IMG/VR virus record: IMGVR_UViG_3300024252_000004
Location: 124,001-188,000 of that record
DNA length: 64,000 nt
Strand: one strand, 5' to 3'
Shown: piece by piece, positions 17,612 to 31,683 of the stretch
Layout: every line of letters starts with the position of its first letter
How positions within the stretch are numbered: the stretch's first letter is position 1
Program-made: the position numbers and the translations under genes
The notes under the pieces: model-generated
The model's database searches: none
Seen by the model: only the letters and a program-made list of their open reading frames with translations
What the model was told of the DNA's origin: nothing

Positions 17612-17850
17612 TGCAAGAACCGTGCCAACTCGGCCCCAGCAAGAATCGTGCCATATAAGTTGTAAAGACTTTGTCAAGACATGAAACGATCTTTACTTGT
17701 TAAGTTTATGTCAACACTTTATTAAAAGTAAAAGTGTTGGTACGGTTATTGCAAAGAAAGAAAAGGTGGCACAGGTTTTGCATACACTGCACGAACCATG
17801 CCAACGTGGCGCGAGCAGCGGCAGCCCAGAAACCTGGCATGGATCTTGCA
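17612..17850. promoter_or_regulatory. Cluster of six sigma54 (RpoN) -24/-12 consensus sites
   Basis: Minus strand: TGGCACGGTTCTTGCA 17612-17627, TGGCACGATTCTTGCT 17638-17653, TGGCATGGTTCGTGCA 17788-17803. Plus strand: TGGTACGGTTATTGCA 17738-17753, TGGCACAGGTTTTGCA 17767-17782, TGGCATGGATCTTGCA 17835-17850. Confidence 0.8.
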
Positions 17851-17931
17851 TGGGGTGCAAAACCTTTCTAAGTAACTGACAAGGTGTTATAGATGGGTGG
17901 AGCGAAAAACTACACACAACGGGCGGACAGC

Positions 17932-18708
17932 ATGGGTAAGGGTTCACGGGTCGAACTGACCAATATGGTGATCGACGCGGCACTCGCCGCGACTGGACAG
18001 AATGTCAGTTACTCGCGGGACGTGCCCAATGGGTTCGTCTCCGCTACTTTCCCCGACCGTATGGGTCGGGACGGGAACCTGAACCCGGTGGACGGCGGCG
18101 GTAAGCTGTTGATTACTCCGGCGAAAGAGTCGAAGGCCGGGCGCGGTCAGGTGTTCTTTGACGTTCACGGGATTTTCGATGGGCTGGAGATCGGGATTAG
18201 TCTGAAGGTGTCAGACTACATCGGCGACGATCACGCCCCGAGAAACTCCATCATCTCAGGTTCCAAGGCTGAGCACTACTTCGGGATGCATCTTGCGGCG
18301 CAGCGGGGGACGTTGCTCCCGGTGATCCAGTTCTGGCAGGACGCCAGCGGGCAGTGGTGGCGCTGCGCTTTTGACGCAGGCCGCATTCTGCGGGAGCGCC
18401 GCCCGAACCTGACGGTGGGGTGGGATAAGCTGCTCCACTCCGAGATCCCGAACATGGCCGCGTGCGGTCAGCTTGATCGCCTGGAGGCGATCACGGGCGA
18501 GCGTCCGCCCATCGTGGCGCTCGGCGAGGGCGGAGCGATCGCGATCTCGCCGCTCGTGCGGGGGCGCGGGAAATACTGCTACCTGTCGGCGAAGATCAGC
18601 CACGCCCGAACGGGTCACGGGTGGACGCCCGTGGACGCCCCTCGCCTGCCGGAGAGCTACGGCGAACTGTTGGAATGGACCGGAGAGCAGGGTGAGATGA
18701 TCGGCTGA
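17932..18708 (+). CDS. Putative PD-(D/E)xK restriction-endonuclease-like protein
   Basis: FFDVHG...GISLK resembles a D...SxK nuclease active site; the ATG at 17893 overlaps the -10, so ATG 17932 is preferred. Confidence 0.45.
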   Translation: MGKGSRVELTNMVIDAALAATGQNVSYSRDVPNGFVSATFPDRMGRDGNLNPVDGGGKLLITPAKESKAGRGQVFFDVHGIFDGLEIGISLKVSDYIGDDHAPRNSIISGSKAEHYFGMHLAAQRGTLLPVIQFWQDASGQWWRCAFDAGRILRERRPNLTVGWDKLLHSEIPNMAACGQLDRLEAITGERPPIVALGEGGAIAISPLVRGRGKYCYLSAKISHARTGHGWTPVDAPRLPESYGELLEWTGEQGEMIG

Positions 18709-18789
18709 GACAAAGGGGGCTCCGGCCCCCGAACCCCGCCCCGTACCGCTTCGGCGGACGGGGCATTAGGGGCAGGAAAGGAGACGCGC

Positions 18790-19212
18790 ATGGAGCCGCA
18801 CGAGATTGAGGATCTGATTGATATTCCGGCCGCAAAGGCTGAGATCATCCGGCGGCTGGACTGGCGGGGATGGCGACGGCGGCTCTTGATCAAGCGGATG
18901 AACGCTTGCACGACCGCCGATCAGCTTTCGCGGTTCAATTGGAACCGGCTGAACCCTAACCCGGATGATGAGGATCTGATTGGGTGGGTGCTTGATGCGG
19001 CCTTTGATGAGATCAAGCGTGCGAACACGCCTCCCGAGGATCTCACGCGCCGCGTGATTTGGTTCGCGGAAGATGGCAGGACGGTGGAGCGGGTTCGGGA
19101 CATCGATCCGGCTTCACTGTTCACCAAGTCGGGCCAGCCGAACGCACAGGCACGCGATCTGCTTCACGAGATTTTCGGAGCGAGGATCGTCAAGCTCCAG
19201 AGGATGGGTTGA
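18790..19212 (+). CDS. Hypothetical protein
   Basis: GGAG RBS, GC3-rich codons. Confidence 0.75.
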   Translation: MEPHEIEDLIDIPAAKAEIIRRLDWRGWRRRLLIKRMNACTTADQLSRFNWNRLNPNPDDEDLIGWVLDAAFDEIKRANTPPEDLTRRVIWFAEDGRTVERVRDIDPASLFTKSGQPNAQARDLLHEIFGARIVKLQRMG

Positions 19213-19442
19213 TGCGGCATGAAGGATGGATCCCCGTGGGGCAGTTGGTCATTGACCGGATGCCCCTGAACCCGGCTACGCTCTCGTGTGCGAACGCGAT
19301 TCTTGAAGGGGTCGAAATGCCTCCGATCAAGGTCCAGGCGTTGCCCGATGGCCGGTGGAAGGTTCGGGACGGTCGGCACCGTGCGGTCGCGCATAAGCTT
19401 ACGGGCAAGGCGCGAATCCTGGCTAAGTGGGGCACGCGATAG
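19212..19442 (+). CDS. Stand-alone ParB/Sulfiredoxin-like N-terminal domain protein
   Basis: MPPIKV....GRWKVRDGRHRAVAH motif; TGATG coupling to the upstream gene. Confidence 0.7.
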   Translation: MRHEGWIPVGQLVIDRMPLNPATLSCANAILEGVEMPPIKVQALPDGRWKVRDGRHRAVAHKLTGKARILAKWGTR

Positions 19443-19501
19443 TTTTCTCCCCGGCAGGTTGCCAGCCTGCCGGGGAGCGGGGAGAAAAACATTTCAAATG
19501 C

Positions 19502-19538
19502 TGGCACGGGTTTTGCAGAGAATGCAACAACTGTGCCA
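19502..19538. promoter_or_regulatory. Convergent twin sigma54 site palindrome
   Basis: TGGCACGGGTTTTGCA-gagaa-TGCAACAACTGTGCCA. Confidence 0.85.
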
Positions 19539-19639
19539 ACGTGTGAGCGTGTGCCTTTTTTCTCCCTGGGGCTGGGGTGAAAAAGAAAACAACTAAGTAA
19601 CTCACAGGATGTTATATCAAGACACCGGAGGTTCTTCCA

Positions 19640-19936
19640 ATGTTTCTGATCCAGATGCCCAGCGCCGCGCTTCCCGGGCGCATGTGCTACTACGATGGCC
19701 CGGCCGAGAACCCGCAGGTCGCGCCGGTGGAGCCCATGAGACGGGCAACCATGCGGGGGACGGGGTTCGATGATGTTTGGCTCGCGTTGGAGGTCCTTGA
19801 GGACTTTCAGTTCGACGCGAAGCACGCGCCGGCCACGCTGAACATGCTCGGAGGGTACGACTACACCGAGCGGCTCATGAAGGGCTGCATCGTGCTGGCC
19901 TCCGAGGTCGAAGGAGTCGAGGTGACCCAGGGCTGA
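19640..19936 (+). CDS. Hypothetical protein
   Basis: GGAGG RBS directly after a promoter copy. Confidence 0.8.
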   Translation: MFLIQMPSAALPGRMCYYDGPAENPQVAPVEPMRRATMRGTGFDDVWLALEVLEDFQFDAKHAPATLNMLGGYDYTERLMKGCIVLASEVEGVEVTQG

Positions 19937-19942
19937 GCCGGG

Positions 19943-20037
19943 CCCTTTCGGGCCCTCAAGAAAACACCGCTGACCGCCGCCTGTGTCGGCATTCGTTCCT
20001 CCAAGGTCAGCGGTGTTTTCTTGAGGGCCCGAAAGGG
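19943..20037. repeat. Perfect 33-bp inverted repeat with a 29-nt loop
   Basis: CCCTTTCGGGCCCTCAAGAAAACACCGCTGACC (19943-19975) is the exact reverse complement of 20005-20037. Confidence 0.95.
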
Positions 20038-20067
20038 GAGAAAAGATTTTCATTCTTGATAAGGAAC

Positions 20068-20104
20068 TGGCACGGACTTTGCAGTGTATGCAAGGGGCAT
20101 GCCA
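20068..20104. promoter_or_regulatory. Convergent twin sigma54 site palindrome
   Basis: TGGCACGGACTTTGCA-gtgta-TGCAAGGGGCATGCCA, enclosed by the 13-bp IR GGGAGAAAAGATT (20036-20048 / 20107-20119). Confidence 0.85.
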
Positions 20105-20172
20105 TCAATCTTTTCTCCCTGTTGTGAGGGGGTGAAAAGAAAGACACCTAAGTAACTCGTAAGATGTTATAG

Positions 20173-20550
20173 AGGGGTGCCGCGACGGCACTGAGCATGA
20201 CAGCGAGTCGGCGCCGACGACTTCGGCGAACCGACAACGACGAAACTAATAGCGAGAGGCTGAAGTTGACTCACAGACGTGTTCATCGCTGCCCACCGTC
20301 CGGGGCATAAACGGACGGCGGCGAGTAGTCGCTTGCGTGGATACCTTGGGGCCGGCAGTCCTGGGGCAAACTAAACGTAACGATGAAGCACCGGGTGTGA
20401 GGGAACGTGAAGACAGGACTCTGCCGGGTCTGGTCATGACACCTAAAACCCTCCTTTGTGACTCTGAGCATTAACCGGGCGACGGCTCGGTTCTGAGAAA
20501 GCAAAGAACGATTCCCCGTTGGGCAGCAAATGCTGTTGCCCAGCGGGACC
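20173..20550 (+). ncRNA. Putative ~380-nt structured non-coding RNA
   Basis: Follows the promoter copy at 20165; no plus-strand ORF; multiple stems (CCGTCCG/CGGACGG, CCGGCAGTCCTG/CAGGACTCTGCCGG, AACCGGGC/GCTCGGTT) and a 3' hairpin. Confidence 0.6.
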
Positions 20551-20584
20551 TCCGGGGAGAAAAACATTTCAAGCCTCGAAAGGT

Positions 20585-20621
20585 TGGCACGGTTATTGCA
20601 TACACTGCAAATGCCATGCCA
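20585..20621. promoter_or_regulatory. Convergent twin sigma54 site palindrome
   Basis: TGGCACGGTTATTGCA-tacac-TGCAAATGCCATGCCA. Confidence 0.85.
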
Positions 20622-20739
20622 GTTTATATGTTCTTTTTCTCCCCTGGCTGAGAATCTGGGGTGAAAAAGAAAACAACTAAGTAACTCACAGGGTGTTATA
20701 GAAGGACGTGAGAGAAACACCCAAACGGAGCATCCCACC

Positions 20740-21192
20740 ATGTCCGACAAGTTCACCCCCCTCTTCGCCGATGCCGCGCCCAAGCGGCAGACCTTCACCG
20801 AGAAGGTGATGAGCAAGGCGCCCGTGTCCTTCGGCACGGACGACCTCGGGAACCCGGTCGTCGGGGTCGGGATCCCCGGCTACGGTGGCTGCGGGGCGGG
20901 GGGGGCCATGCTGCTGCGGCCGGAGAACATGCAGAACTTCTGCACGGCCATCCGCAACGCCGTCGATGGTGTGGGTCCCGACCCGCTCCAGGTCGCCGTG
21001 GAGACTATGACTCGCACGGGAGAGGGGGAGATCAGCTTCAAGCTGAGCCACATGCCCCGGTCCCAGACGATCACGATGTCGTCCGCCGAGGCCATCGAGT
21101 TCGCAACGCTCGTGGAGCGGATGATCACCGCCTGCGAGAAGAAGGCGCAGGGTCCCGAGACGGACGGCGAGGAGGCGACCGACGGGGAGTGA
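20740..21192 (+). CDS. Hypothetical protein, possible PUR/PC4-like nucleic-acid-binding fold with acidic tail
   Basis: Two beta-rich+helix units and an E/D tail; architecture parallels 32276-32863. Confidence 0.6.
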   Translation: MSDKFTPLFADAAPKRQTFTEKVMSKAPVSFGTDDLGNPVVGVGIPGYGGCGAGGAMLLRPENMQNFCTAIRNAVDGVGPDPLQVAVETMTRTGEGEISFKLSHMPRSQTITMSSAEAIEFATLVERMITACEKKAQGPETDGEEATDGE

Positions 21193-21264
21193 TCTCCGCC
21201 CCGCCCCGGGAGGCTTCGGCCCCCGGGTTCCGGGGAGAAAAGATTTTCATTTTTGATAAGGAAC

Positions 21265-21300
21265 TGGCACAGATATTGCATGTATGCAAGAGTCATTCCA
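21265..21300. promoter_or_regulatory. Convergent twin sigma54 site palindrome (right half degenerate)
   Basis: TGGCACAGATATTGCA-tgta-TGCAAGAGTCATTCCA inside the 14-bp IR GGGGAGAAAAGATT (21232-21245 / 21303-21316). Confidence 0.75.
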
Positions 21301-21417
21301 TCAATCTTTTCTCCCCTGTGTGTGTATGGGGGTGAAAAAGAAAACAACTAAGTAACTTATAAGATGTTATAGAGAGGTGCCCGACAGACCGTGGCACCCA
21401 AACTCTGGAGAAATCGC

Positions 21418-21954
21418 ATGTCCTTCACGCCTCCGCACTCGCACTCCCGCTCCGTCGCTGGCCTCGGACGGCTTCTCGTCGCCGTCATGATCTCCGGCGA
21501 CAAGGCGCTCATCGCCCTCAAGTCGGCGGAGCAGGCTGTGGATGGGGCGCGGACGCGCCTGACCGTGTGGTTCCCCAACGATGAGCAGTGGCCGACCGAC
21601 GCCGAGGACAATCGCGAGGTGATCAGCGCCTTGTCCGTCGCCAACGGGGAGGTGAAGCACGCCCGGCTGATGCTGGACGGCGTCAAGGTCTCGCGGGCCG
21701 CCGGCCTCGACTTCCTGACGAGCCTGCACGAGGAGGTCGCGGCCTGCTCTGACCGCCTGTTCGTCAACCCCTACACCGGGAAGGGCGGAAAGACCTACAT
21801 GGCGTTCTTCGGCGAGGGCGACGACATCGAGCACCGGGGCCAGACCCACCGCGAGTTGCGGGACACCCTCCGCGCGAAGATCAAGAAGGCGGGCCTGGAT
21901 CCGGTGAAGGTCCAGGCGGACCACGGCTACGGCCGAGGGCGTGGCCGGCGCTGA
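21418..21954 (+). CDS. Hypothetical protein
   Basis: GGAG RBS before ATG 21418; strong GC3 codon bias. Confidence 0.8.
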   Translation: MSFTPPHSHSRSVAGLGRLLVAVMISGDKALIALKSAEQAVDGARTRLTVWFPNDEQWPTDAEDNREVISALSVANGEVKHARLMLDGVKVSRAAGLDFLTSLHEEVAACSDRLFVNPYTGKGGKTYMAFFGEGDDIEHRGQTHRELRDTLRAKIKKAGLDPVKVQADHGYGRGRGRR

Positions 21955-22127
21955 GCCGCACCCTGACGGGAGCTTCGGCTCCCCGAAGGGGGAGAAAAAC
22001 ATTGCAGAAGCATATGTGTATGCTTTTTCTCCCCTGTGCGTGTGTGTCGGGGTGAAAAGAAAAACAACTAAGTAACTCATAGGATGTTATTACAAGGTGT
22101 AAGGAACCCAAAAGCGGAGCATTGAAC

Positions 22128-22310
22128 ATGGACACGCCGACCATCATCATCGTGGATCTCTACGGGAAGGACGGGCGACCCGTCCGCACGGGAATCACGT
22201 TCCACAGCAACGACGAGGCGACCGCGAAGGAACAGGCTTCCGAGTTCGCGACACACCACAAGTCGCGGGGGAAGACCGTAAAGGCCCGGCGTCCGAAGAA
22301 GAAGCGTTGA
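22128..22310 (+). CDS. Small basic hypothetical protein
   Basis: GGAG RBS, KKKR C-terminus. Confidence 0.75.
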   Translation: MDTPTIIIVDLYGKDGRPVRTGITFHSNDEATAKEQASEFATHHKSRGKTVKARRPKKKR

Positions 22311-22315
22311 CGCAT

Positions 22316-22406
22316 GTGGGGCCGGGCAGGCGGACGCGGGTTCGATTCCCGCATCAGCCGGTCGCAAGCGATAGCTTGCCGGAGGGTTCGATTCCCTCCC
22401 CCCCAC
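22316..22406 (+). ncRNA. tRNA-like element with two T-arms
   Basis: GCGGG-TTCGATT-CCCGC (22336-22352) and GAGGG-TTCGATT-CCCTC (22382-22398); closing GTGGGG/CCCCAC; internal helix 22322-22331 / 22374-22382; no anticodon arm. Confidence 0.65.
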
Positions 22407-22531
22407 GGGGAGAAAAACATAACACCTTATCAAGATATGAGACTTTTCTCCCCTGCGTGTGCGTGTCGGGGTGAAAAACAATTCAACTAAGTAACTCATA
22501 GGATGTTATTCTAAAGTGTAGGAGGTTCCCG

Positions 22532-22834
22532 ATGCGAGTGCAGAACGACGACGGCATGTTCGAGTTTCAGACGGATTGCCGTCGCTGGCTGTGTATCCAG
22601 ACGACCCGGAAGGGACGGCGGGAGTTTGCTCCCCGTGTCCTCGTGCCGTATGCGTACGCCGGGAGTCTCTCTGCTCAGGCTCGCGCCGAGGGTGCGACCA
22701 GCGCGGACTTCGGAATCGTGGAGCCCAAGGTCAAGAAGCCGCGTGCGCCCAAGGCTCCGCGCAAGCCTCGTCAGCCTCGCAAGGTGAAGGCTCGGATGCC
22801 GGAGGGTTTCGTGCCCCTGGATCTGGGGCTCTGA
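22532..22834 (+). CDS. Hypothetical protein with Lys/Pro/Arg-rich (histone H1-like) tail
   Basis: GGAGG RBS; KVKKPRAPKAPRKPRQPRKVK. Confidence 0.75.
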   Translation: MRVQNDDGMFEFQTDCRRWLCIQTTRKGRREFAPRVLVPYAYAGSLSAQARAEGATSADFGIVEPKVKKPRAPKAPRKPRQPRKVKARMPEGFVPLDLGL

Positions 22835-22906
22835 ACGGCAAAAGGTCCCGATCACCAAGTGATCGGGACCTCCGGGGAGAAAACTTTTGCGTTTATCTTG
22901 ATGAGG

Positions 22907-22943
22907 TGGTATGAATCTTGCAGAGAATGCAAGGGTTGTGCCA
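22907..22943. promoter_or_regulatory. Convergent twin sigma54 site palindrome
   Basis: TGGTATGAATCTTGCA-gagaa-TGCAAGGGTTGTGCCA. Confidence 0.8.
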
Positions 22944-23020
22944 CCCAGGGGAGAAAAGATTCATATGTATATGCTGGGGTGAAAACCTTAGCACACAGGA
23001 AACTGGTAGGGTGTTATAGA

Positions 23021-23710
23021 AGGGTGCCGGAAAGACCCGGCAAACAGATGGATAAGGAGAATCGATAGAGTCTGCGAGAAGTGCGTGTCTCTCTTCTAAA
23101 CGCAACGCTTTGTAGCTCGTAATACCTCAGTCACCACGCAGGCGAATGCGTACCGGTGGTGACAGTTTGCCAGTCCGACGTGAAGAACAGCAGTGGTGGA
23201 TACCGGGAAGGGAAGCGGCAGCACCGTGAATAGCCGACCCGGAAACGCGAAATCGATAGTACAGACTCCCAGTAACGTGATACGCGCCCTTCGGGGAAAG
23301 CTTAACCAGTCTGTCTCGTAAGTGCATGATACCAAAGTGCAGTCCTTTAAGGGATGTAGCAGGCAACCGGAGCCGAGAACACCGAAAGGCAAATCCGGGA
23401 CTGAGGAAATGAGGTCGAAAAAGGATCGAAAGTCTGCGATCACCACCGCCATGGCGGGGTCAATCCAGGCGACGGAATCTAAGCTACTCGGTTAAGCAAC
23501 CTGAGACTAAAGACTTCCGGCGGGACTCTGCCGACATAGATAACTATAGAGGATGGACACGGAAAAGATGGGCTGCCCGGTGCAGACCAAGATGTCCATA
23601 ACATTTGCGCGAAGAGGTAGCTCCTACGAAGGCAAATCCTGTAAAGTTACCGCCCCCCACTCACGCGCCTTTGGCCGGTCATGAGTGGGGGGCGGCTCCT
23701 TTTGTTTTCC
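23021..23710 (+). ncRNA. Putative ~690-nt large structured non-coding RNA
   Basis: Runs from the promoter copy (23012) to a terminator (23650-23710); no credible ORF; long-range helices CCTCAGTC 23125 / GACTGAGG 23399 and GTAGCT 23112 / AGCTAC 23482; UUCG/GAAA tetraloops. Confidence 0.7.
23650..23710 (+). terminator. Intrinsic terminator
   Basis: 14-bp stem CCGCCCCCCACTCA / TGAGTGGGGGGCGG followed by CTCCTTTTGTTTT. Confidence 0.75.
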
Positions 23711-23822
23711 CCGTATGTCAAGCTTTTCTCCCCTGCGTGTGCGTGTCGGGGTGAAAAACAATTCAACTAAGTAACTCATAGGGTGTTATATCAAAGTATA
23801 ACAAAACCAAAGAGCAATCAAG

Positions 23823-24452
23823 ATGACTATCGCCGGTGATAGCCGCGACACGCGGAACCCTCAGAAGTCCTGGGTCGCTTGGACGGCGTCTCTCTGGGCT
23901 CAGAAGATCCTGCGGGCCGAAGTAAATCGTCCCGAGGTAGTGTCTCTCACGGGGGACTATGTCCAGGCGCACATGGAGGAGCTTTTGCCCTTCCATCGTC
24001 GGCATTTCTTCGAGATGGATCCTGTCCAGCTTCGCAAGATGCGGCGGAAGTTCAAGCGGCTCCCTCGCACGTTCACACGGGACGAGATCAGCGACACGAC
24101 CATCCATCAGGGGAACATCTTCAAGACCGACGTAGTTTCGGATGCCGATGGGGCGTATTACGACTGGGACATCACCGGCTCGATTCGTGAGGCCATCAAG
24201 TATGGTCTTGAAGATGCTGTGTGGGACGCTTTTGAGTCTCCGGGGACTCGGTGCATGGCTCTGACGGTTTCCCGTCGGATGCCGGGTGGCAAAGCGAAAA
24301 CGTCGGAGCTTTGGCGGGAGATCGTCAATGGGATCGGCGGAGTGTTCGGAGACTCTCGTGTGTGGGAGTTCGAAGAGCCGATCCACTACGGCCGGGCACG
24401 CCTTGGCTGCGGCAACATGATGCTCATCCGTGCGGTCATCCGCGAGCGGTGA
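23823..24452 (+). CDS. Hypothetical protein (possible class I methyltransferase-like fold)
   Basis: VVSLTG..., FFEMD, IHQGNIF and YYDWD fall at strand ends as in a Rossmann fold; weak call. Confidence 0.55.
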   Translation: MTIAGDSRDTRNPQKSWVAWTASLWAQKILRAEVNRPEVVSLTGDYVQAHMEELLPFHRRHFFEMDPVQLRKMRRKFKRLPRTFTRDEISDTTIHQGNIFKTDVVSDADGAYYDWDITGSIREAIKYGLEDAVWDAFESPGTRCMALTVSRRMPGGKAKTSELWREIVNGIGGVFGDSRVWEFEEPIHYGRARLGCGNMMLIRAVIRER

Positions 24453-24482
24453 AAAGAGCAATAGAAGATGTAAGGGGGCAAA

Positions 24483-24608
24483 GTGGAAATCGTCATCGTC
24501 TGGTACTCTGCGAACGAACGCGAAGACACTCCCGTGGAGGGGTTCTACCGATGGGATGATTCCCATTGTGGCGACAGCCTTTCCTTCGTCGGGACGGAGC
24601 TTCCATGA
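24483..24608 (+). CDS. Small hypothetical protein (41 aa, not in ORF track)
   Basis: AAGGGGG RBS, GTG start, ATGA overlap with the next gene. Confidence 0.55.
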   Translation: MEIVIVWYSANEREDTPVEGFYRWDDSHCGDSLSFVGTELP

Positions 24609-24919
24609 AAAGTCACGAAAAGTCTGATAGCAAACGCTGGGTGATTCAGCGCTGCGTTCGCTGCGGGCATTGGTGGGACCCGCATGGAATCTGGACAACC
24701 GACTGTCCGGCTCCGACCGAAGCTGCGCAGAGTCTGATGGCAGATCTGCGTGTGCTTGGCATCCGAAGCTCCGCCAAGCAGAATGTGGTGTTCGCATGGC
24801 GTACGAGGCGGGTGAATCCGTGGAATCGTAGGGAGTTCGATGCTCGGCACCAAACGGCCGAGGAAATCGAGAAAGAACTGCGAACCCATCCCACACGTCA
24901 GTCCCTTTACCGGGGCTGA
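24605..24919 (+). CDS. Hypothetical protein with CxxC
   Basis: RCVRCGH motif; translationally coupled start. Confidence 0.65.
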   Translation: MKSHEKSDSKRWVIQRCVRCGHWWDPHGIWTTDCPAPTEAAQSLMADLRVLGIRSSAKQNVVFAWRTRRVNPWNRREFDARHQTAEEIEKELRTHPTRQSLYRG

Positions 24920-25047
24920 GGTCGGGGAGAAAAGATTGTTATTCTTGTGAAGGTATTCTCCCCGATGCCTAAGCCGGGGTGAAAAACAATTCAACTAAGT
25001 AACTCACAAGATGTTATATCAAAGCGTAACAAAGGGATGAAGAAAGA

Positions 25048-25389
25048 ATGGGAACGGACCTGAACAAACTCCTTTCGGAGTGTGACGTTGAAACCTACGC
25101 TGCTTCGCGCGGTTCGGGTGGACAGAACGTCAACAAACGGGATACGGCGGTGCGTCTGACGCATCGTCCCACCGGAATCAAAGCCGGTTCCCGTTCCCAT
25201 TCCACGCAGGGACGGAATAAGAGCGAAGCGCTCAAACGTCTGGCAAAGAAGATCGCTCAGGCAAACGAGGTCAAGGCGGAGCGGTTGCCCACGGGAATCC
25301 CGCAGTCCGTCAAGGAAAAACGATTGTCTGATAAGCGTCGGACTTCTGCACGAAAGACCGGACGGAAGCCCGTCCGATCGGAGGACTGA
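25048..25389 (+). CDS. ArfB/PrfH-like GGQ peptidyl-tRNA hydrolase (stalled-ribosome rescue)
   Basis: SRGSGGQNVNKRDTAVRLTH.PTGI...Q.RNK..AL..L plus basic tail KRL.DKRR.S.RK..R. Confidence 0.88.
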   Translation: MGTDLNKLLSECDVETYAASRGSGGQNVNKRDTAVRLTHRPTGIKAGSRSHSTQGRNKSEALKRLAKKIAQANEVKAERLPTGIPQSVKEKRLSDKRRTSARKTGRKPVRSED

Positions 25390-25391
25390 TC

Positions 25392-25601
25392 ATGGGCAAG
25401 AAAGAACCCCTGATTGAGACGGCGGAATGCTGGTGCGGTAAAACTGTAACGTGTTCGTCAGAGGATTTCGGAAAGCCTGACGTGGTAGTCCCCGGATGGG
25501 TTTCTTGGAAGCCTATCAAGAAAGAATGTTCGTGCGGAGAGTCTCTGATCTTCGGAATGGACTTCGACAAGTTTCTGAACCTCTTTGAGGTGGAGTACTG
25601 A
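25392..25601 (+). CDS. Small Cys-rich (zinc-finger-like) protein
   Basis: ECWCG...ECSCG; GAGGA RBS. Confidence 0.7.
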   Translation: MGKKEPLIETAECWCGKTVTCSSEDFGKPDVVVPGWVSWKPIKKECSCGESLIFGMDFDKFLNLFEVEY

Positions 25602-25787
25602 ATGGTGTTCTACTACCTGATGTCTCGCGGCATCTTCGCTGGCCTGATGGCCTATGGCTACGCCCACTACGAGAGCGAGATCTGGATCTGGGCAGGACTC
25701 GTCGCGCTGGTGCCTTTCTTGGGCGAAATCGTGATGATCGGGTTCCTCGTTTTCACGATGTTCTTTCTGTTGGGGTCTTTCGCATGA
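25602..25787 (+). CDS. Small membrane protein
   Basis: Two hydrophobic segments; GGAG RBS. Confidence 0.7.
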   Translation: MVFYYLMSRGIFAGLMAYGYAHYESEIWIWAGLVALVPFLGEIVMIGFLVFTMFFLLGSFA

Positions 25788-26170
25788 AGTACGGACTTTC
25801 TCTCTCTTTCTGTGTGCGTGCGATCATTGATCGCGAGATCACTCTCTTCGAGATCGCTGGCATCATCTCTGCGACAAAGATGGAGTCGCCGGAGGAAGCG
25901 TACGAGCAGTACGGAAAGAGCTACTGGTCTGAGGCGTCAGAAGATGATGTGATGGTGGTCCTTCGGGAACTCTGGCCCCGAGTGATTCAGCCACGCATGT
26001 ACGGTCTTCCGCACCACAATATCTCCAAGGGAATCTGGTTGGAGGTTGCGCATGACCGGCTCCCGGTGCTCATCGAGGCGCGGCACTGTGCCTACTGGAT
26101 GGAGGGAACTGGTAACGAGCCCGCCATCGGTATGATTCGAAACGGTGGACTCTGGAAGTTTCTGGCCTGA
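25784..26170 (+). CDS. Hypothetical protein
   Basis: ATGA coupling, 128 aa. Confidence 0.75.
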   Translation: MKYGLSLSFCVRAIIDREITLFEIAGIISATKMESPEEAYEQYGKSYWSEASEDDVMVVLRELWPRVIQPRMYGLPHHNISKGIWLEVAHDRLPVLIEARHCAYWMEGTGNEPAIGMIRNGGLWKFLA

Positions 26171-26327
26171 GCCTACGCCGAGCCTCCAATCAAGGAGGCT
26201 CGGTCGGGGAGAAAAGATAATCATTCTTGTGAAGGTATTCTCCCCGAAGCACAGATAGGGGGTGAAAAACAATTCAACTAAGTAACTCATAAGATGTTAT
26301 AGAGAGGCACAGAATCGGGAGCAGAGA

Positions 26328-26843
26328 ATGGATATTCTTTCGAAAGTCGGCATGGTGGTTGGGGTGACTGCGCTTTGCGCTTCGCTCTACTCTGCTTACT
26401 CTCACTTCTACGATGGGAAAACCGTCCCCGAGAAGCTCCCGATGGTGGGGCAGGCTTGGTGGGTGGAAGGAAAGGGGACCGTTCTGGTCGCAGAAGTCTA
26501 CCCTGCGGAAGATCGGATCGTCTACAAGACCAAGAACCACAAGGGTGGATGGTCGGACGATCTGACTACTGAGTCTACTCTCGGGCAGTTCATGAACTAC
26601 TCTCGGGTCAACAAGAAGATGACGACTCACGAGTCCGCTCCTGAGAAGAAGGATCGGCGTCCGATGGTGGGTCAGATCTGGGAAGTCGCCGGCTTCGGTG
26701 ATGTGCGAGTCCTTTACTGCGACGGCTACTCCGTTAGCTACAGCTACAAACTGGATCCGTGGAGAAATGAGTCGAGTGAGACTACGGATCTCGAACTGTT
26801 CTACCACTACGGAAACGTCAAGAAAGAGAAGGAGGCCAAGTGA
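26328..26843 (+). CDS. Membrane-anchored protein with two internal repeats
   Basis: N-terminal hydrophobic helix; PMVGQAWWVEGKGTV / PMVGQIWEVAGFGDV repeat. Confidence 0.8.
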   Translation: MDILSKVGMVVGVTALCASLYSAYSHFYDGKTVPEKLPMVGQAWWVEGKGTVLVAEVYPAEDRIVYKTKNHKGGWSDDLTTESTLGQFMNYSRVNKKMTTHESAPEKKDRRPMVGQIWEVAGFGDVRVLYCDGYSVSYSYKLDPWRNESSETTDLELFYHYGNVKKEKEAK

Positions 26844-27169
26844 GTCTACCGAAGCTTCGCATTGGCAACATCGTCCACTGGAATGGCAATCCTTGGGGCG
26901 GAAAGGTTATCTCGAATGGATACGATCTGAATGGAGGGCTCGGGTTCTACTGTATCATCAAGGCTCCCCTTCAGCCCGTGCGCAGGGGTGGGCGTCCGCT
27001 CTGGCTGATCTTCGAAGACGGAACGGTGAGCCCTTCGCTGGGGGATTCCGAGCCTCTCATGTCCCTGCGTGTGAACGGTATCCCTTACCCTCTCGTCATC
27101 GAGGGAGAACTGGAGACGTACACGTTCGAAGGCGAGGGTGAACTCAAGTTCCTTCTGGAAACCCTGTAA
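26840..27169 (+). CDS. Hypothetical protein
   Basis: GGAGG RBS, GTGA coupling. Confidence 0.75.
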   Translation: MSLPKLRIGNIVHWNGNPWGGKVISNGYDLNGGLGFYCIIKAPLQPVRRGGRPLWLIFEDGTVSPSLGDSEPLMSLRVNGIPYPLVIEGELETYTFEGEGELKFLLETL

Positions 27170-27193
27170 ACTTCTCAAACCCGCGAGTAACTG

Positions 27194-27370
27194 ATGCTTA
27201 GGCTTCTTTGGGCCCTTGTCAAATGGGGCATCTTCAGTTGGATGATCGATGTCAGAGCTTTCGGCTGGCACATTTTCCCCAGGGAATGGTGTGCTTGGGC
27301 TGAATGCACTTCGAAAGAGTGTTTGGCTCTGGATGACTTCGATGCAGCTATCTTTCGGCTCAAGGGCTGA
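27194..27370 (+). CDS. Small hypothetical protein (58 aa, not in ORF track)
   Basis: MLRLLWALVKWG...RLKG, ends at the cassette boundary. Confidence 0.5.
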   Translation: MLRLLWALVKWGIFSWMIDVRAFGWHIFPREWCAWAECTSKECLALDDFDAAIFRLKG

Positions 27371-27459
27371 AGGACGGGGAGAAAAGATTGGAGGGTGAAA
27401 AAGAAAACACACAGGAAACTTATAAGATGTTATATGAGGTTGTATTCTCCGGAGACAAT

Positions 27460-27771
27460 GTGATTCCCAACAGCAACATCCCGTCCTACGCAATCCCCTT
27501 CCACATCGGCGTCTGCGGTCTGATCATCGCCTGGGCCCTCGGCGTTGAGGCTGCCAAGTTCATCACGGAGGCCGTGATCACGCTGATCGGTGCGCCGATC
27601 CACTTCGCCCTGTGGACTTTCGATGCTGCGATCGACGCGGTCTACCTGAACGGCTACGAGTACGACCATCCGGTCGATGTCAATGAGCGTGCTGCGTTCG
27701 CTGTCGCGTCCGGTCACAGTGGGTTCGCCCACCGGCCGAGTTCTCATATCAGCGGATGGCGAGGCTACTGA
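27460..27771 (+). CDS. Membrane protein
   Basis: GTG after GGAG, downstream of a promoter copy; hydrophobic helices. Confidence 0.7.
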   Translation: MIPNSNIPSYAIPFHIGVCGLIIAWALGVEAAKFITEAVITLIGAPIHFALWTFDAAIDAVYLNGYEYDHPVDVNERAAFAVASGHSGFAHRPSSHISGWRGY

Positions 27772-27902
27772 GCCTCTCCCGCTCCGGCTGCGGCCGGAGA
27801 TTGGGGAGAAAAGATAAGCATCCTTGTCAAGGAGTGAAAACCTTAACCCCCAAGAAACTCATAAGATGTTATAGAATGACACCAAAAGATATCGAGGAAA
27901 CC

Positions 27903-28346
27903 ATGAAGTCTCTGCTCAACAGTCTGAACAAGTCTCTCCCTTCGATCATGGGATCGAAGAACCAGACGATGATCGATGCTGCTGTGCTGCTCAAGGCATC
28001 GATCACCGATCAGATCAACGGCGGTGGCCCGAAGGGCTGGGTCTGGCAGGAGACCGTGAGCGACAGCTTCGTCGCCCTCGATCTTCACCATCCTCAGCGC
28101 GGAAAGATCCGGGTCTTCTCGGCTTCGGAAGCGTGCTGGGACTGGCGACAGTATCTCGGTCGCGGCTACAACATGGGCACCGTTAAGCTGCCAAATGGCG
28201 GGAACGAGCCTGTCGGACAGTACCGGAATTTCAAGACGGGATTTCGGAACATCGTTCAGATCGCGAAGATCCGGTGGGGATCCATCACGGTCGCGGACGA
28301 GAAGCGGAAGGTCAACGACCTCAAGGGGAAATTCCATTGGGGCTGA
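27903..28346 (+). CDS. Hypothetical protein
   Basis: GAGG RBS before ATG 27903 (alternative ATG 27876). Confidence 0.75.
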   Translation: MKSLLNSLNKSLPSIMGSKNQTMIDAAVLLKASITDQINGGGPKGWVWQETVSDSFVALDLHHPQRGKIRVFSASEACWDWRQYLGRGYNMGTVKLPNGGNEPVGQYRNFKTGFRNIVQIAKIRWGSITVADEKRKVNDLKGKFHWG

Positions 28347-28561
28347 ACGAACCGAAGTTCAAGACCTACGACGAGCGGAACCGTGCAGGCTGCTGTGCGC
28401 GGGGAAGCTGCGAAGAAAAGCTGTGTCCTGATGACACATGGATCAACAGCCTGAACAACAACAAGTACTGCGGTCCCTGCAAGGACTTCTTTTACTTTAG
28501 GCATGACCGATTCGCGACCGGAAAGATCCAGAGAAAGTGGACCCTCATGCCTTCGGGCTGA
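28337..28561 (+). CDS. Small Cys-rich hypothetical protein
   Basis: CC..C...C...C..C pattern; start uncertain (TTG). Confidence 0.5.
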   Translation: MGLNEPKFKTYDERNRAGCCARGSCEEKLCPDDTWINSLNNNKYCGPCKDFFYFRHDRFATGKIQRKWTLMPSG

Positions 28562-28609
28562 GGGGATTCACCCTGTCGGGGAGAAAAGATATACATTCTT
28601 GATAAGGAT

Positions 28610-28646
28610 TGGTACGGTTCTTGCACACACTGCAAGACCTATGCCA
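28610..28646. promoter_or_regulatory. Convergent twin sigma54 site palindrome
   Basis: TGGTACGGTTCTTGCA-cacac-TGCAAGACCTATGCCA. Confidence 0.8.
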
Positions 28647-28749
28647 TATAGCCTTTTGCCTATGCCCACCGGGGAGAAAAACTATTCATGTAAGTAACTC
28701 ATAGGGTGTTATATCAGGCCGTGAGAGCAACCTACCCGGAGAGTGCAGC

Positions 28750-29073
28750 ATGGCCCGACCGACCTACTTCCTGATCGATGACGATTCGCTGGAGACCTAC
28801 ACGACCCTGGACGCGGAGGATCTCGACAACTGGGCTGTTCTGGTGAACGGTGCCATCGTCTCCATCGAGGCGGACGAGGAGGACTGTGAGATCCGCATCG
28901 CTGAGATCAATCGGGAGGGTGACAACCTGACCAACGATCTGGGCTTCGGTGCCGAAACGCAGTGCGACGACGGCGACGACGCCGACGACGACCAGGGCGG
29001 AGTCTGGGGCGACTTCGACAACACGGTCGGTGCGGGCGAGTGGGCCGACAAGGCCGTCCAGAAGTCCTGGTGA
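28750..29073 (+). CDS. Very acidic hypothetical protein (possible DNA mimic)
   Basis: D/E-dominated 107 aa; GGAG RBS. Confidence 0.75.
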   Translation: MARPTYFLIDDDSLETYTTLDAEDLDNWAVLVNGAIVSIEADEEDCEIRIAEINREGDNLTNDLGFGAETQCDDGDDADDDQGGVWGDFDNTVGAGEWADKAVQKSW

Positions 29074-29363
29074 GTCGCCGTCTCGCAATCGTCCTCGATC
29101 CCGACAATAGCGATCCGGCCTGGGGTGCGGCTGAGGAGGCCGCCTTCCGGCGGTTCACCGACGAAAGCCACTACCCGGAGTCAGCCGAGGGCAATCCTGT
29201 TCCGGTTCTGGAAGGGGAGAGGATCCCGATCTACGATCTGATCGAGGCCGCCCGAGCCCTGGTGGACTGTGCCGATCACACCGGCTGTACCCCTGACCTC
29301 GCAGTTGTGGATTCCGATCCACTTTTCAAGCTCAAGCGTGTCCTCGACAGCATCGGAGAATGA
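29070..29363 (+). CDS. Hypothetical protein
   Basis: GTGA coupling; GC3-rich frame. Confidence 0.7.
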   Translation: MSRRLAIVLDPDNSDPAWGAAEEAAFRRFTDESHYPESAEGNPVPVLEGERIPIYDLIEAARALVDCADHTGCTPDLAVVDSDPLFKLKRVLDSIGE

Positions 29364-29890
29364 CAGTGATCCCCTTCGTCTCGCATCCATCGGGGAATGA
29401 CATGAGCGCCCCAGAAATCGATTGGGACAACCAAGACCTGATCTCGAAGTTCATGCTTGACATGGATTCCGGAAATGTCCTGATTTCTTTCGCCGCGAAC
29501 CTGAGCATGGCAACTGCCCATATCGCTCCGGAAAACTTCTCTGCGTTCGTGGACGCATACGAGAAGCTTGCGGCGATGGATCCCAGTGAGCTTCAGGGGA
29601 ATGAGGTTGCCGTATGGCAGGACGGGAAGGTCGTTCAGGTGGTGGGATTCCCTGACCTGAAGCCCACGGACTGGTACATCGAAGCGATGCTGGCAACGGC
29701 GTACATCAAGTTTCGCGACGGAAAGGGGATGTTCGAAGATCGTACCCGCCTCATGTGGCATGGTCCGATTGGCACCCGTGGAACCTTCCTTGTCGAAACC
29801 TGCAACATCCAGAAGGTGGCCAAGATGCTCCGAGCAGCGATCCCGCTCGTGGCGGCGGCTGTGAAAACCATGAAGGAAGGTACCGAATGA
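29360..29890 (+). CDS. Hypothetical protein
   Basis: ATGA coupling, GGAG RBS. Confidence 0.75.
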   Translation: MTVIPFVSHPSGNDMSAPEIDWDNQDLISKFMLDMDSGNVLISFAANLSMATAHIAPENFSAFVDAYEKLAAMDPSELQGNEVAVWQDGKVVQVVGFPDLKPTDWYIEAMLATAYIKFRDGKGMFEDRTRLMWHGPIGTRGTFLVETCNIQKVAKMLRAAIPLVAAAVKTMKEGTE

Positions 29891-30145
29891 AGCCCCTGAA
29901 AGAAGAGGATGCCCAAGCCATTCTCGCTGCGGCTTACAAGGCTGCGGCGGAAAAAAAAGAACACATGGCCCGTTATCCTCGATGTCTGCAAGGAGCGGGA
30001 AATCGAGTTCGGTTGGGCTTCCATGTTCTCCCTGATGACCGATTTCTTCTACGAAGATGTGCGTGAATGGAGTGAAGGAAACTACGGAAAGGACGCCATC
30101 TATTTCTACGCTCTGATTCCAGAAGACGAAAGCCATTCGGGGTAA
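29887..30145 (+). pseudogene. Frameshifted hypothetical gene (+1 shift at an A8 run)
   Basis: MKPLKEEDAQAILAAAYKAAAEK joins KNTWPVILDVCKEREIEFGW... if one A of 29951-29958 is removed. Confidence 0.65.
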
Positions 30146-30304
30146 GGTCTACGAGGTGGGGGAATAGTCCCCTCCCTCCGGGGAGAAAACTATTACAAAT
30201 TAAGCAATGTTTTTCTCCCCGAGCCAGGAGCGGGGTGAAAAGAAATACACACAAGTAACTCATAGGATGTTATAGAGAGGCGCCTCCAATCATAGAGAGT
30301 CTCA

Positions 30305-30596
30305 ATGAATCGCCTCTTTCGCGTCTTCGTCTTCCTGGCCGCCACCGCCGCCCTTTTCGTCGTTCTTCCGGGGTTCAACCCTTCGACCCTGAACGAGATC
30401 ACGACCAGCGGCCTCGGCACGGTCGCGAAGGGGTTCCCTCGTGCCGGAGGTCTTCAAGCACCCCGGTGCATGTACCTTCGAACCGGCATACACGGATTCG
30501 ATGACGTACAGGGTCAGCTACATCGTGGGAGGACTCGTCTTCGCCTACGTCTTGGGGAAGCTGATCCAGAAGAAGAAGAAGAAGAAGAAGAAGTAG
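30305..30596 (+). pseudogene. Frameshifted membrane protein with poly-Lys tail (+1 shift at TTCCCTC)
   Basis: Removing one C at 30436-30438 gives ...KGFLVPEVFKH...IVGGLVFAYVLGKLIQKKKKKKKK*, with the GC3 bias of neighbouring genes. Confidence 0.65.
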
Positions 30597-30714
30597 GGAG
30601 TCAGGGCTTCGGCCCTCCCTCAGGGGAGAAAAAGATTGCATTATCGATAAGGGGTGAAAACCTTAACACACAGGAAACTCATAAGACGTTATAGAGTGAC
30701 ACATGGAGAGGGTA

Positions 30715-30873
30715 ATGTGGTCATACAGTGAAGCTTCAATCCTCGCATCGCTTCCGCTTTTCGCGGTTGCAATGCTGATTGACTTCGAAGTCTTCGCTGT
30801 CCCAAGAACGACCATCTATCTCCTTCCGCTTATTCCGTTCGTGACGTTTCTGTTCTCCCGAGGTAAATACTGA
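30715..30873 (+). CDS. Small membrane protein (52 aa, not in ORF track)
   Basis: GGAGAGGG RBS, two hydrophobic segments, TGATG coupling. Confidence 0.65.
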   Translation: MWSYSEASILASLPLFAVAMLIDFEVFAVPRTTIYLLPLIPFVTFLFSRGKY

Positions 30874-31637
30874 TGGACATCGAACGATTCAAGAAGCTGG
30901 CAAGTCAGGCGCGTAGCTTCCGAGGTCTCATTGACTTCGCGGACCCCTACTGGGAGTCCTCCGTTTTCTTCGAGATTCCCTCGGCCAATGAGAAGGACGA
31001 GTACGCTTGTCCGCTCGCATCGTCGGACAATCTGGATTTCCTGGCAGGGATGTTCGGTGCGGGTAGCGACCTTCACGTCTGGAACTGCGTGTTCGTGTCT
31101 GAGCCTTCCGAAGAGGTTCGGGAGAGCTACAGTACCCACGGCAACAAGATGGCGCGGTACGTCCTGTGGACGGACAACCCAAGGTATCGCTCCGTCGATT
31201 TGATGAAGAACTTCATCCGTGACTTCACGCTCGGTTGGCGGCTGGCTCTCGCGCCCATCCGTGCGGCAGAGAAGGCCGCCGCAAAGGAAGCGGAAGAAGC
31301 CTTCCAGTCTCGCTGCGATGATTGGGTGAAGGTTTTCGGAGATGCCATCCAAAACTACAAGGTCGATTCGCGTGGGAACGAGTTCGCCGGGATTACCTTC
31401 AAGAAGGACCCCGACTTCAGAGCCTTCTACAGCCGCGTGACCTCGAAGGTCATGACGGCAGAGCAGTTCAGTGTGTACCGCCCCGGGACGCAGGAACTCT
31501 ATGGCAGGGGCAAAACTGTGAACGGGTCATTCGATCTGTACACGTTCGGTGCTCACCTGGAGATGTGGACCAACTGCTACCCGGATGATCCCGCGAACAA
31601 GGCTTACCGAAAGATCCGGCATCTTTGCCGGGTCTGA
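30873..31637 (+). CDS. Hypothetical protein
   Basis: 254 aa, coupled start, GC3-rich. Confidence 0.8.
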   Translation: MDIERFKKLASQARSFRGLIDFADPYWESSVFFEIPSANEKDEYACPLASSDNLDFLAGMFGAGSDLHVWNCVFVSEPSEEVRESYSTHGNKMARYVLWTDNPRYRSVDLMKNFIRDFTLGWRLALAPIRAAEKAAAKEAEEAFQSRCDDWVKVFGDAIQNYKVDSRGNEFAGITFKKDPDFRAFYSRVTSKVMTAEQFSVYRPGTQELYGRGKTVNGSFDLYTFGAHLEMWTNCYPDDPANKAYRKIRHLCRV

Positions 31638-31683
31638 CCACGGGGCTTCGGCCCACCATCTATTCTGCTGAGAGGAGAGAATC

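What the first reader, a model, noticed from the sequence alone, without database searches (positions are those of the whole stretch)
23021..23710. About 690-nt promoter-to-terminator cassette with no protein: candidate large ornate ncRNA
Seen: it has its own promoter copy and a twin sigma54 element upstream, and a strong terminator. No ORF shows the local GC3 bias. Nested helices include CCTCAGTC/GACTGAGG (274 nt apart), GTAGCT/AGCTAC (370 nt apart), GTCACCAC/GTGGTGAC, ACAGACT/AGTCTGT and ATGGACA/TGTCCAT, with UUCG and GAAA loops. Established: phages carry large structured RNAs such as GOLLD and ROOL. I found no group II intron domain V, no complete group I core and no RNase P signature. Inference: possibly a new RNA class expressed like an early gene.
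Basis: partly seen in the sequence, partly recalled or inferred. Interest (0 to 1): 0.8.

Follow-up and report, generated by a model that had tools for sequence, protein, structure and literature searches.

The report
Abundant orphan noncoding RNA, jumbo phage
A roughly 690-base gene in a 400-kb seawater phage makes an RNA that encodes no protein, is the only part of its neighbourhood found in four ocean RNA data sets, and matches no known RNA family; whether it folds into an elaborate shape is still unproven.

Summary
The cassette is real. It has one of 18 copies of a phage-specific promoter, a palindromic sigma54-like element upstream, a 14-bp intrinsic terminator, and no credible ORF on either strand.

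New evidence: in four seawater metatranscriptomes, the only contigs that map to a 5.5-kb stretch lie inside the cassette (23038-23272 and 23310-23614, 100% identical). The flanking genes, driven by the same promoter type, are at zero depth. So it is a transcribed, accumulating noncoding RNA.

It matches no Rfam family, including GOLLD, ROOL, OLE, RNase P, tmRNA and group I/II introns. I found no homologue in any searched collection. A related phage contig carries a bona fide GOLLD RNA about 2 kb from the shared neighbouring gene, so large RNAs are part of this kind of gene array.

The "ornate" claim is not supported:
- Without the terminator, the RNA body folds no better than shuffled sequence (z = -0.73; the GOLLD control gives -2.71).
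- The listed helices are close to chance expectation.
- Covariation cannot be tested without homologues.

All four left-hand RNA contigs end within 1 nt of 23271, at an encoded CCA, which hints at processing.

Verdict: a genuine, abundant, orphan phage ncRNA. Its structure and function remain open.

The parts
22907..22943 (.). Palindromic twin sigma54-like (-24/-12 type) element upstream of the promoter
   Evidence: family D6 (8 copies); 16 single-arm matches vs 1.03 expected. Here the minus-strand arm 22928-22943 is perfect and the plus-strand arm has 2 mismatches.
22962..23018 (+). Copy of the phage-specific promoter (GGGGTGAAAA box ... AACT..TAGGGTGTTATA), ending directly at the probable start site
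   Evidence: (D1, D8), 39 and 61: 18 aligned copies with 19 invariant columns. Gene 17893 has its ATG immediately after ...TGTTATAG, so transcription probably starts right after TATA. That places the start at about 23019 here (inferred).
23019..23706 (+). Predicted primary transcript, about 690 nt, non-coding
   Evidence: The bounds are inferred from promoter and terminator. No ORF evidence. No Rfam family.
23025..23042 (+). 5' terminal hairpin (6-bp stem TGCCGG / CCGGCA)
   Evidence: I17. Present in every fold. Similar 5' hairpins follow other promoter copies.
23038..23272 (.). RNA contig 1, present in all four metatranscriptomes. Its right end is sharp at 23270-23272, an encoded CCA.
   Evidence: table 8: records 1, 3, 5, 6, with 0-1 differing letters and word depth 3.8-10.1.
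23273..23309 (+). Stretch missing from all RNA contigs. It is the interior of the predicted hairpin ACAGACT (23261) / AGTCTGT (23308), which contains a cUUCGg loop.
   Evidence: no contig, no joint, no loose end; I14.
23310..23614 (.). RNA contig 2, present in two of the four metatranscriptomes
   Evidence: table 8: records 2 and 4, no differing letters, word depth 5.4-14.7.
23643..23708 (+). Intrinsic terminator: 14-bp perfect G+C-rich stem, 18-nt loop region, U-rich tail
   Evidence: I1; fold; terminator scan at 23687-23701.

Best explanation
This is a stand-alone gene for a non-coding RNA of a ~400-kb marine phage.

It is transcribed from the same phage-specific promoter that drives about 17 neighbouring small-gene cassettes. 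Transcription probably starts at about 23019 and stops at the intrinsic terminator near 23706. The RNA is not translated. It accumulates far above the mRNAs of the flanking cassettes, so it is unusually stable, and it acts as RNA. The sharp end at 23271 suggests it may be processed into a ~250-nt 5' piece and a ~300-nt 3' piece.

Most likely role (inferred, about 0.25-0.3 on its own): it fills the same niche as the large phage RNAs GOLLD and ROOL. That is, an abundant folded RNA that binds or sequesters a host or phage component of the translation or RNA-metabolism machinery during infection. A related phage carries GOLLD in the equivalent gene array. The local array holds a ribosome-rescue-type RF-1 domain protein, a tRNA-like element, and a methyltransferase-fold protein directly downstream.

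Shown: the cassette anatomy, the absence of coding signal, the presence of the RNA in RNA libraries with silent flanks, and the absence from known families.
Inferred: the strand, the exact ends, stability as the cause of abundance, and the function.
For: Transcript evidence:
- on window 21000-26500, four metatranscriptome runs give contigs only at 23038-23272 and 23310-23614, all 99-100% identical. All 26 other depth bins are zero.
- those runs hold 22% of the sampled words of the 2-kb stretch but 66% of the words of the cassette. This means only the cassette is present.

Cassette anatomy:
- shared promoter.
- terminator oriented for the plus strand.

No coding signal:
- no frame is open, no local GC3 bias (most, not all, neighbouring genes show it), and no Shine-Dalgarno-preceded ORF.
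- the 118-aa antisense ORF has no relatives among 5.8 billion proteins or 1.84 billion cluster representatives.

Family and context:
- no Rfam family reaches threshold.
- a contig encoding a 50%-identical homologue of the downstream gene carries GOLLD (154.5 bits, gathering score 150) next to a tRNA.
- the neighbourhood has a translation/RNA theme.
Against: - No homologue was found, so there is no conservation or covariation evidence that the RNA is under selection.
- The RNA body is not more stable than shuffled sequence.
- Logan contigs carry no strand, so transcription of the plus strand is inferred.
- The RNA runs were selected because they hold this sequence. Absence of flanks therefore shows only that the RNA is several-fold more abundant than its neighbours in those runs.
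- The depths are low (4-15).
- The nearest tRNA is 11.6 kb away, unlike typical GOLLD/ROOL loci.
- The functional analogy to GOLLD/ROOL rests on context only.
Confidence: 0.6

Rival explanations
1. The cassette is a precursor, and the functional molecules are two or more shorter RNAs. One would be a 5' piece ending at the encoded CCA at 23269-23271. The other would be a 3' piece from about 23310. The hairpin interior between them would be removed by processing.
For:: the left contig ends at 23272, 23270, 23271 and 23271 in four independent runs, while its start varies by 78 nt. The right piece is seen in only two runs and its depth ratio to the left piece differs (9.8:5.4 vs 10.1:14.7). The gap matches the interior of the hairpin 23261-23267 / 23308-23314. 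In the fold of the 5' piece, its 3' end pairs back to 23056-23066 and leaves a short overhang.
Against: Contigs are not reads. A branch in the assembly graph (microdiversity) or a local coverage or reverse-transcription drop at the cUUCGg hairpin would also break contigs there. No joint and no loose end was reported. No T-arm precedes the CCA (read directly from the sequence).
Confidence: 0.2
2. It is a decayed protein-coding cassette (pseudogene) that is still transcribed from its intact promoter and has no function as RNA.
For: It sits in an array of protein-coding cassettes of similar length. Its body has no folding signal. GC differs weakly by position in one constant phase: 0.46 / 0.54 / 0.59.
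Against: Every plus-strand frame has 7-13 stops of mixed kinds. The position pattern does not match the local coding pattern, where GC2 is lowest and GC3 is 0.7-0.93 in most neighbouring genes (two are near 0.61). An untranslated pseudogene mRNA would be expected to be less abundant than its translated neighbours from the same promoter, not more. Promoter, 5' hairpin and terminator are all intact.
Confidence: 0.07
3. It is an mRNA, or a dual-function RNA, for one or more very small peptides.
For: Short plus-strand ORFs exist: 42, 57 and 43 aa.
Against: None has a Shine-Dalgarno core 4-11 nt upstream, whereas about half of the local genes do. None shows the GC3 bias. There is no start codon at the probable 5' end for leaderless translation.
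Confidence: 0.06
4. It is a highly divergent member of GOLLD or ROOL that the Rfam models miss.
For: A related contig has GOLLD in the same kind of array. The size range fits. A GUGGAUA word is shared with the GOLLD consensus.
Against: No GOLLD or ROOL hit appears even at E <= 10 on a 1-kb search with lax filters, whereas the control scores 154.5 bits. Local alignment to the GOLLD cassette of L052 is at chance (score 20 vs 22 +/- 2.7 for shuffles). The shared 7-mer is in the wrong order relative to the other GOLLD motifs.
Confidence: 0.04
5. The RNA signal is an artefact, arising from DNA carry-over or from another organism that shares this stretch.
For: The tool itself warns that DNA can be present in RNA libraries and that contigs show presence only.
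Against: DNA carry-over would cover the flanks equally. 4.9 kb of flank has zero depth in all four runs. The contigs are identical to the phage over 156-305 nt each, and no other source of this sequence was found.
Confidence: 0.03

Closest known systems
GOLLD RNA (Rfam RF02032)
   Same: Large RNA (hundreds of nt), phage-encoded, non-coding, and a free-standing transcription unit. GOLLD expression rises during phage lysis (10.1101/2024.12.08.627333). A contig related to this phage through the downstream 209-aa gene carries a GOLLD about 2 kb from that gene.
   Different: No match to the GOLLD model and no sequence similarity. There is no adjacent tRNA. No folding signal, whereas the GOLLD 3' domain gives z = -2.71. 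No family of homologues is known.
ROOL RNA (an Rfam family)
   Same: A roughly 600-nt non-coding RNA of phages and prophages, with no known protein partner and unknown function (10.1101/2024.12.08.627333).
   Different: No match to the model. ROOL is defined by extensive covariation and pseudoknots, which cannot be tested here. ROOL loci are often near tRNA islands.
OLE RNA
   Same: A large (~600 nt), very abundant bacterial non-coding RNA.
   Different: OLE is chromosomal in Firmicutes and has dedicated protein partners (from my own knowledge, not tested here). No model match.
Phage early-gene cassettes read by a phage-specific RNA polymerase (T7/SP6-type promoter logic)
   Same: A long, nearly invariant promoter ends at the start site (...TGTTATA|G resembles the ...CTATA|G end of SP6/T7 promoters, from my own knowledge). 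It is repeated before each small gene, and each gene has its own terminator.
   Different: The polymerase was not identified. This resemblance is a lead, not a test. The extra GGGGWGAAAA boxes and sigma54-like palindromes have no counterpart in T7-type promoters.

Membership tests
GOLLD (RF02032) | Score at or above the curated gathering threshold (150 bits) of the covariance model of the conserved 3' domain | tested here: not met
   No hit at gathering on the window or at E <= 10 on 22800-23850. The positive control L052:3867-4293 scores 154.5 bits.
GOLLD (RF02032) | Location in a phage or prophage next to tRNA genes | tested here: not met
   Phage origin is met. The only tRNA in the window is at 35306-35382, 11.6 kb away.
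GOLLD / ROOL | Extensive covariation-supported secondary structure with pseudoknots | not testable with these tools
   No homologue was found in any collection.
GOLLD / ROOL | Self-assembly into a multimeric RNA cage | not testable with these tools
   This needs in vitro transcription and cryo-EM or native gels. Two AUCGAU palindromes (23061, 23252) are only a hint.
ROOL | Match to the Rfam covariance model | tested here: not met
   No hit.
tmRNA / RNase P RNA / group I and II introns / 6S / OLE | Match to the Rfam covariance models; for tmRNA also ARAGORN | tested here: not met
   ARAGORN at default and 90% thresholds finds nothing in 23019-23710.
CsrB/RsmZ-type protein sponge RNA | Many GGA / ANGGA motifs, far above composition expectation | tested here: not met
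   GGA occurs 18 times vs 15.7 expected, and AGGA 4 times vs 4.5. The RsmY hit is only 12.3 bits against a gathering score of 57.
Stand-alone bacterial/phage ncRNA gene (generic) | Own promoter, own terminator, no translatable ORF, and a detectable transcript confined to the unit | tested here: met
   promoter; terminator; no ORF; transcript confined to 23038-23614.

The most novel reading that the evidence does not exclude
This RNA is the founding member of a new class of large phage RNAs that plays the GOLLD/ROOL role in marine jumbo phages. It would be a stable, possibly processed and self-associating RNA made from an early-type cassette, which remodels the host translation or RNA machinery.
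Probability: 0.3. Interest if true: 0.8.

Novelty: new variant of a known kind. Interest (0 to 1): 0.6.

Why it matters
Large phage RNAs such as GOLLD and ROOL are among the most striking RNAs with no known function, and only a handful of such classes exist. Here an uncultured 400-kb ocean phage devotes a full promoter-to-terminator unit to an RNA that outnumbers its neighbouring transcripts in natural samples and fits none of those classes. A relative uses GOLLD in the equivalent array.

If homologues can be gathered, this gives a second, independent RNA solution in the same genomic niche. Comparing the two could help show what these RNAs do. If no homologues exist, it shows that abundant lineage-specific phage ncRNAs escape covariation-based discovery and are found only through transcript data.

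Tried and rejected
Family searches
- Rfam at gathering and at E <= 10 gave only sub-threshold noise: Ms_IGR-5 at 24 bits over the terminator, miRNA models on the terminator hairpin, and RsmY at 12 bits.

Homologue searches (all returned only this phage or chance matches)
- blastn against 50,697 phage records and 72,556 plasmids.
- Exact-word scans of IMG/VR with four RNA words and with the promoter.
- One 20-mer scan of 185,579 genomes. The two hits lie inside a coding gene of Syntrophaceae MAGs and do not extend.
- nhmmer and blastn of the RNA against all 69 fetched loci.
- Searches through relatives of the downstream gene in IMG/VR and JGI metagenomes, which found only 3 non-self lineages, none with the RNA.
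- The upstream 100-aa protein is an orphan.
- Using the spurious 118-aa antisense ORF as bait found nothing.

Ideas tested and rejected
- Stop-codon recoding.
- A paralogue relationship with the second ORF-less cassette at 20177-20560: the alignment score is at chance.
- Internal duplication: at chance, apart from one repeated 11-mer.
- A CsrA-sponge role.
- Similarity to the GOLLD cassette of L052.
- RNase P and tmRNA readings of short motifs seen by eye. These are not supported by the models.

Literature
- Searches found no description of this phage or RNA.

Full report
**Where the window comes from**

The window belongs to an uncultured seawater phage. The identical stretch lies on IMG/VR contigs of 395 kb and 236 kb, and on a 414.6-kb contig in the protein collection. 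At least 15 seawater DNA runs hold it completely. Nothing similar exists among 50,697 deposited phage genomes. Pfam finds a type IA topoisomerase, a UvrD-type helicase, an adenylosuccinate-synthetase homologue and a T4 Rnl1-type RNA ligase elsewhere in the window.

The stretch from 17.9 to 35 kb stands out. Its G+C is 0.52-0.64, against 0.35-0.48 on either side. It is built of small units, all on the plus strand.

**The cassette**

Each unit begins with a copy of a ~60-nt element: a GGGGTGAAAA box, then AAGTAACTCATAGGRTGTTATA. There are 16-18 copies, and 19 alignment columns are invariant. The copy for the finding is at 22962-23018.

In the first unit of the array the start codon follows ...TGTTATAG directly. 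Transcription therefore most likely starts right after TATA, which puts the start here at about 23019. This is an inference.

Eight units, including this one, also carry an upstream palindrome made of two sigma54-type -24/-12 elements. The single-arm pattern TGGCAC-N5-TTGCA occurs 16 times in the window against 1.03 expected, all between 17.6 and 32 kb. In this copy the plus-strand arm has two mismatches.

The unit ends in a hairpin with 14 perfect pairs (23650-23663 / 23682-23695) and a U-rich tail.

**No protein**

All three plus-strand frames carry 7-13 stops of mixed kinds, so no single-codon reassignment opens a frame. Most neighbouring genes have GC3 of 0.7-0.93 with GC2 near 0.45; two are near 0.61. 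The longest ORFs inside the cassette have GC3 of 0.53-0.60. In 180-nt windows the spread of G+C over the three positions averages 0.11, against 0.34 in genes. No plus-strand ORF of 8 codons or more has a Shine-Dalgarno core at 4-11 nt, although about half of the local genes do.

The one sizeable ORF is 118 aa on the minus strand (23096-23452). It has no relative among 5.8 billion clustered proteins or among 1.84 billion cluster representatives read by HMMER. The only other hits are short stretches of long multi-stretch proteins, which I take as spurious.

**A transcript exists and is confined to the cassette**

Four seawater metatranscriptome runs hold 66%, 66%, 24% and 11% of the sampled words of the cassette. 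When the query was the 2-kb stretch including both flanking genes, the same runs held 22%, 22% and 8%. That is the same absolute number of words.

I laid the contigs of these runs on window 21000-26500. This gave six contigs, all inside the cassette:
- 23056-23272, 23038-23270, 23064-23271 and 23116-23271
- 23310-23614 and 23322-23594

They carry one differing letter in total. Every depth bin outside 23024-23759 is zero. The laid stretch includes five other cassettes with the same promoter, so neither DNA carry-over nor uniform transcription explains the pattern. The RNA accumulates well above its neighbours.

Three limits apply. Contigs carry no strand. Depths are low (4-15). The runs were chosen because they hold this sequence, so only the within-run contrast counts.

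**An unexplained detail**

The left contig ends at 23272, 23270, 23271 and 23271 in the four runs, although its start varies by 78 nt. These positions are the A, or its neighbours, of an encoded CCA (23269-23271). The gap up to 23310/23322 is the interior of a predicted hairpin (7-bp stem at 23261-23267 / 23308-23314) that contains a cUUCGg loop. No joint or loose end was reported.

A discrete 3' end from processing would explain this. So would a block to reverse transcription, or a branch in the assembly graph.

**Not a known RNA family**

cmscan of the whole window at gathering thresholds finds only tRNA-Arg at 35306-35379. At E <= 10 on 22800-23850 the best hit is 24 bits over the terminator, against a threshold of 45. 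GOLLD, ROOL, OLE, RNase P, tmRNA, 6S, intron and ribozyme models do not appear. ARAGORN finds nothing there, even at 90% thresholds. GGA motifs are not enriched, so it is not a CsrB-type sponge.

**Is it 'ornate'?**

However, complementary 7-mers (14 vs 8.8) and 8-mers (5 vs 2.0) are reached by about 9% of shuffles.

The z-score of -2.4 for the full cassette is identical on the two strands and is due to the terminator. The other folding results are:

| Stretch | z-score |
|---|---|
| Body without terminator (23024-23640) | -0.73 (6 of 20 shuffles fold as well) |
| 5' piece (23024-23271) | -0.75 |
| 3' piece (23308-23640) | -0.48 |
| 300-nt windows inside the body | +0.4 and -0.9 |
| Control: GOLLD 3' domain from a related contig | -2.71 (0 of 100 shuffles) |

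So there is no thermodynamic support for an unusually elaborate fold. This test is weak for large RNAs with tertiary structure and does not exclude one.

**Relatives and context**

The downstream gene (23823-24452, 209 aa) has four relatives at 42-59% identity. AlphaFold on their alignment gives a confident class I methyltransferase fold (pLDDT 81.6). The best PDB matches are the methyltransferase domain of bacterial Hen1, followed by NNMT, Erm and KsgA. This is a generic fold assignment and says nothing about the substrate.

The 53-kb contig FLOH01000877.1 shares this gene, a 271-aa protein and the RF-1 domain protein, but it has no sequence like the RNA within 10 kb.

The Tara contig L052 shares the gene at 50% identity. 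About 2.1 kb downstream it carries a GOLLD RNA (RF02032, 154.5 bits, threshold 150) followed by a tRNA. The candidate has no similarity to that GOLLD cassette.

All other attempts to find a homologue of the RNA returned only this phage or chance matches. Covariation therefore could not be tested.

**Interpretation**

The best-supported reading is a genuine, abundant, non-coding RNA gene of a marine jumbo phage, in a family not yet described. Its mechanism is inferred from context only. It shares a promoter with a block of small genes. It is far more abundant than they are, which suggests stability. A relative places GOLLD in the same kind of array. The local genes include an ArfB-like RF-1 domain protein, a tRNA-like element and a methyltransferase-fold protein. 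Relatives also encode L7/L12-like proteins.

I therefore favour a GOLLD/ROOL-like role as a stable RNA that engages the translation or RNA machinery. I put this at about 0.25-0.3, and a further 0.2 on the variant in which the active species are processed pieces.

The other readings are less likely, for the reasons given in the Rival explanations section: a transcribed pseudogene, a micropeptide mRNA, a divergent GOLLD/ROOL, and an artefact.

**Novelty and score**

Large phage RNAs of unknown function are a known kind. This one fits none of the known families and has direct transcript support from natural samples. It lacks homologues and any evidence of structure. I rate it a new variant of a known kind, with interest 0.6.

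Noticed in passing
window 17900-35000: A 17-kb block with G+C of 0.52-0.64 inside a genome of about 0.35-0.48, with GC3 up to 0.93 in its small genes. All genes are on the plus strand, and each has its own promoter copy and terminator. None of 10 of its proteins matches any PHROG.
   Followed up: partly
window 17612-31957 (16 sites; palindromic pairs at 17767, 17835, 19502, 20068, 20585, 22907, 28610, 31942): Sigma54-type -24/-12 elements (TGGCAC-N5-TTGCA), mostly arranged as head-to-head palindromes upstream of the phage promoter. There are 16 matches vs 1.03 expected. Whether they act as promoters, operators or sigma54 traps is unknown.
   Followed up: partly
window 20177-20560: A second ORF-less cassette with the same promoter, a twin sigma54-like element and a terminator. 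The longest plus-strand ORF is 45 aa (min_aa-45 scan) and lacks GC3 bias. The fold z-score is -3.63, measured with the terminator included. It has no Rfam match and no similarity to the candidate. It lies outside the stretch on which RNA contigs were laid.
   Followed up: partly
window 22309-22406: Directly after the 62-aa gene there are two hairpins with canonical tRNA T-arm sequence (GGGTTCGATTCCC type). The first equals the tmRNA consensus T arm (tmRNA model 22.6-28.8 bits, below the gathering score of 47). ARAGORN at 90% threshold calls a 92-nt tRNA-like element at 22315-22406. This may be a tRNA-like 3' end or a processing signal.
   Followed up: partly
window 25048-25389: A 113-aa protein with an RF-1 (peptidyl-tRNA hydrolase, ArfB-like) domain (Pfam E = 2.7e-18). 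It is conserved at 44% identity in the related contig FLOH01000877.1.
   Followed up: partly
window 23823-24452: The gene directly downstream of the RNA folds as a class I SAM-methyltransferase-like Rossmann domain (pLDDT 81.6). The best PDB match is the bacterial Hen1 RNA 3'-end methyltransferase domain (TM 0.57-0.62, 14% identity). It has no Pfam or PHROG hit.
   Followed up: partly
L052 3867-4293 (Tara Oceans contig NODE_11205, ERZ5402382): A bona fide GOLLD RNA (154.5 bits) inside a ~1.1-kb ORF-free stretch, followed by a tRNA at 4513-4585. A second tRNA lies at 1775-1845, right after the homologue of the 209-aa gene.
   Followed up: yes
window 23061-23066 and 23252-23257; 23385-23395 and 23629-23639: Inside the RNA, the 9-mer AATCGATAG (containing the palindrome ATCGAT) occurs twice, and the 11-mer AAGGCAAATCC occurs twice. 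AGTCTG occurs three times, and its complement CAGAC twice. This could reflect alternative or intermolecular pairing, or it could be chance.
   Followed up: no
window 57513-58802 and 60270-61559: An adenylosuccinate-synthetase homologue (PurA-like; I did not check whether it is the PurZ type used for modified adenine) and a T4 Rnl1-type RNA ligase.
   Followed up: no
L051 5985-6443 and the JGI contig of P0004: Relatives of this phage's early-type array encode proteins with Ribosomal_L12 (L7/L12) domain hits. This adds to the translation theme of these arrays.
   Followed up: no
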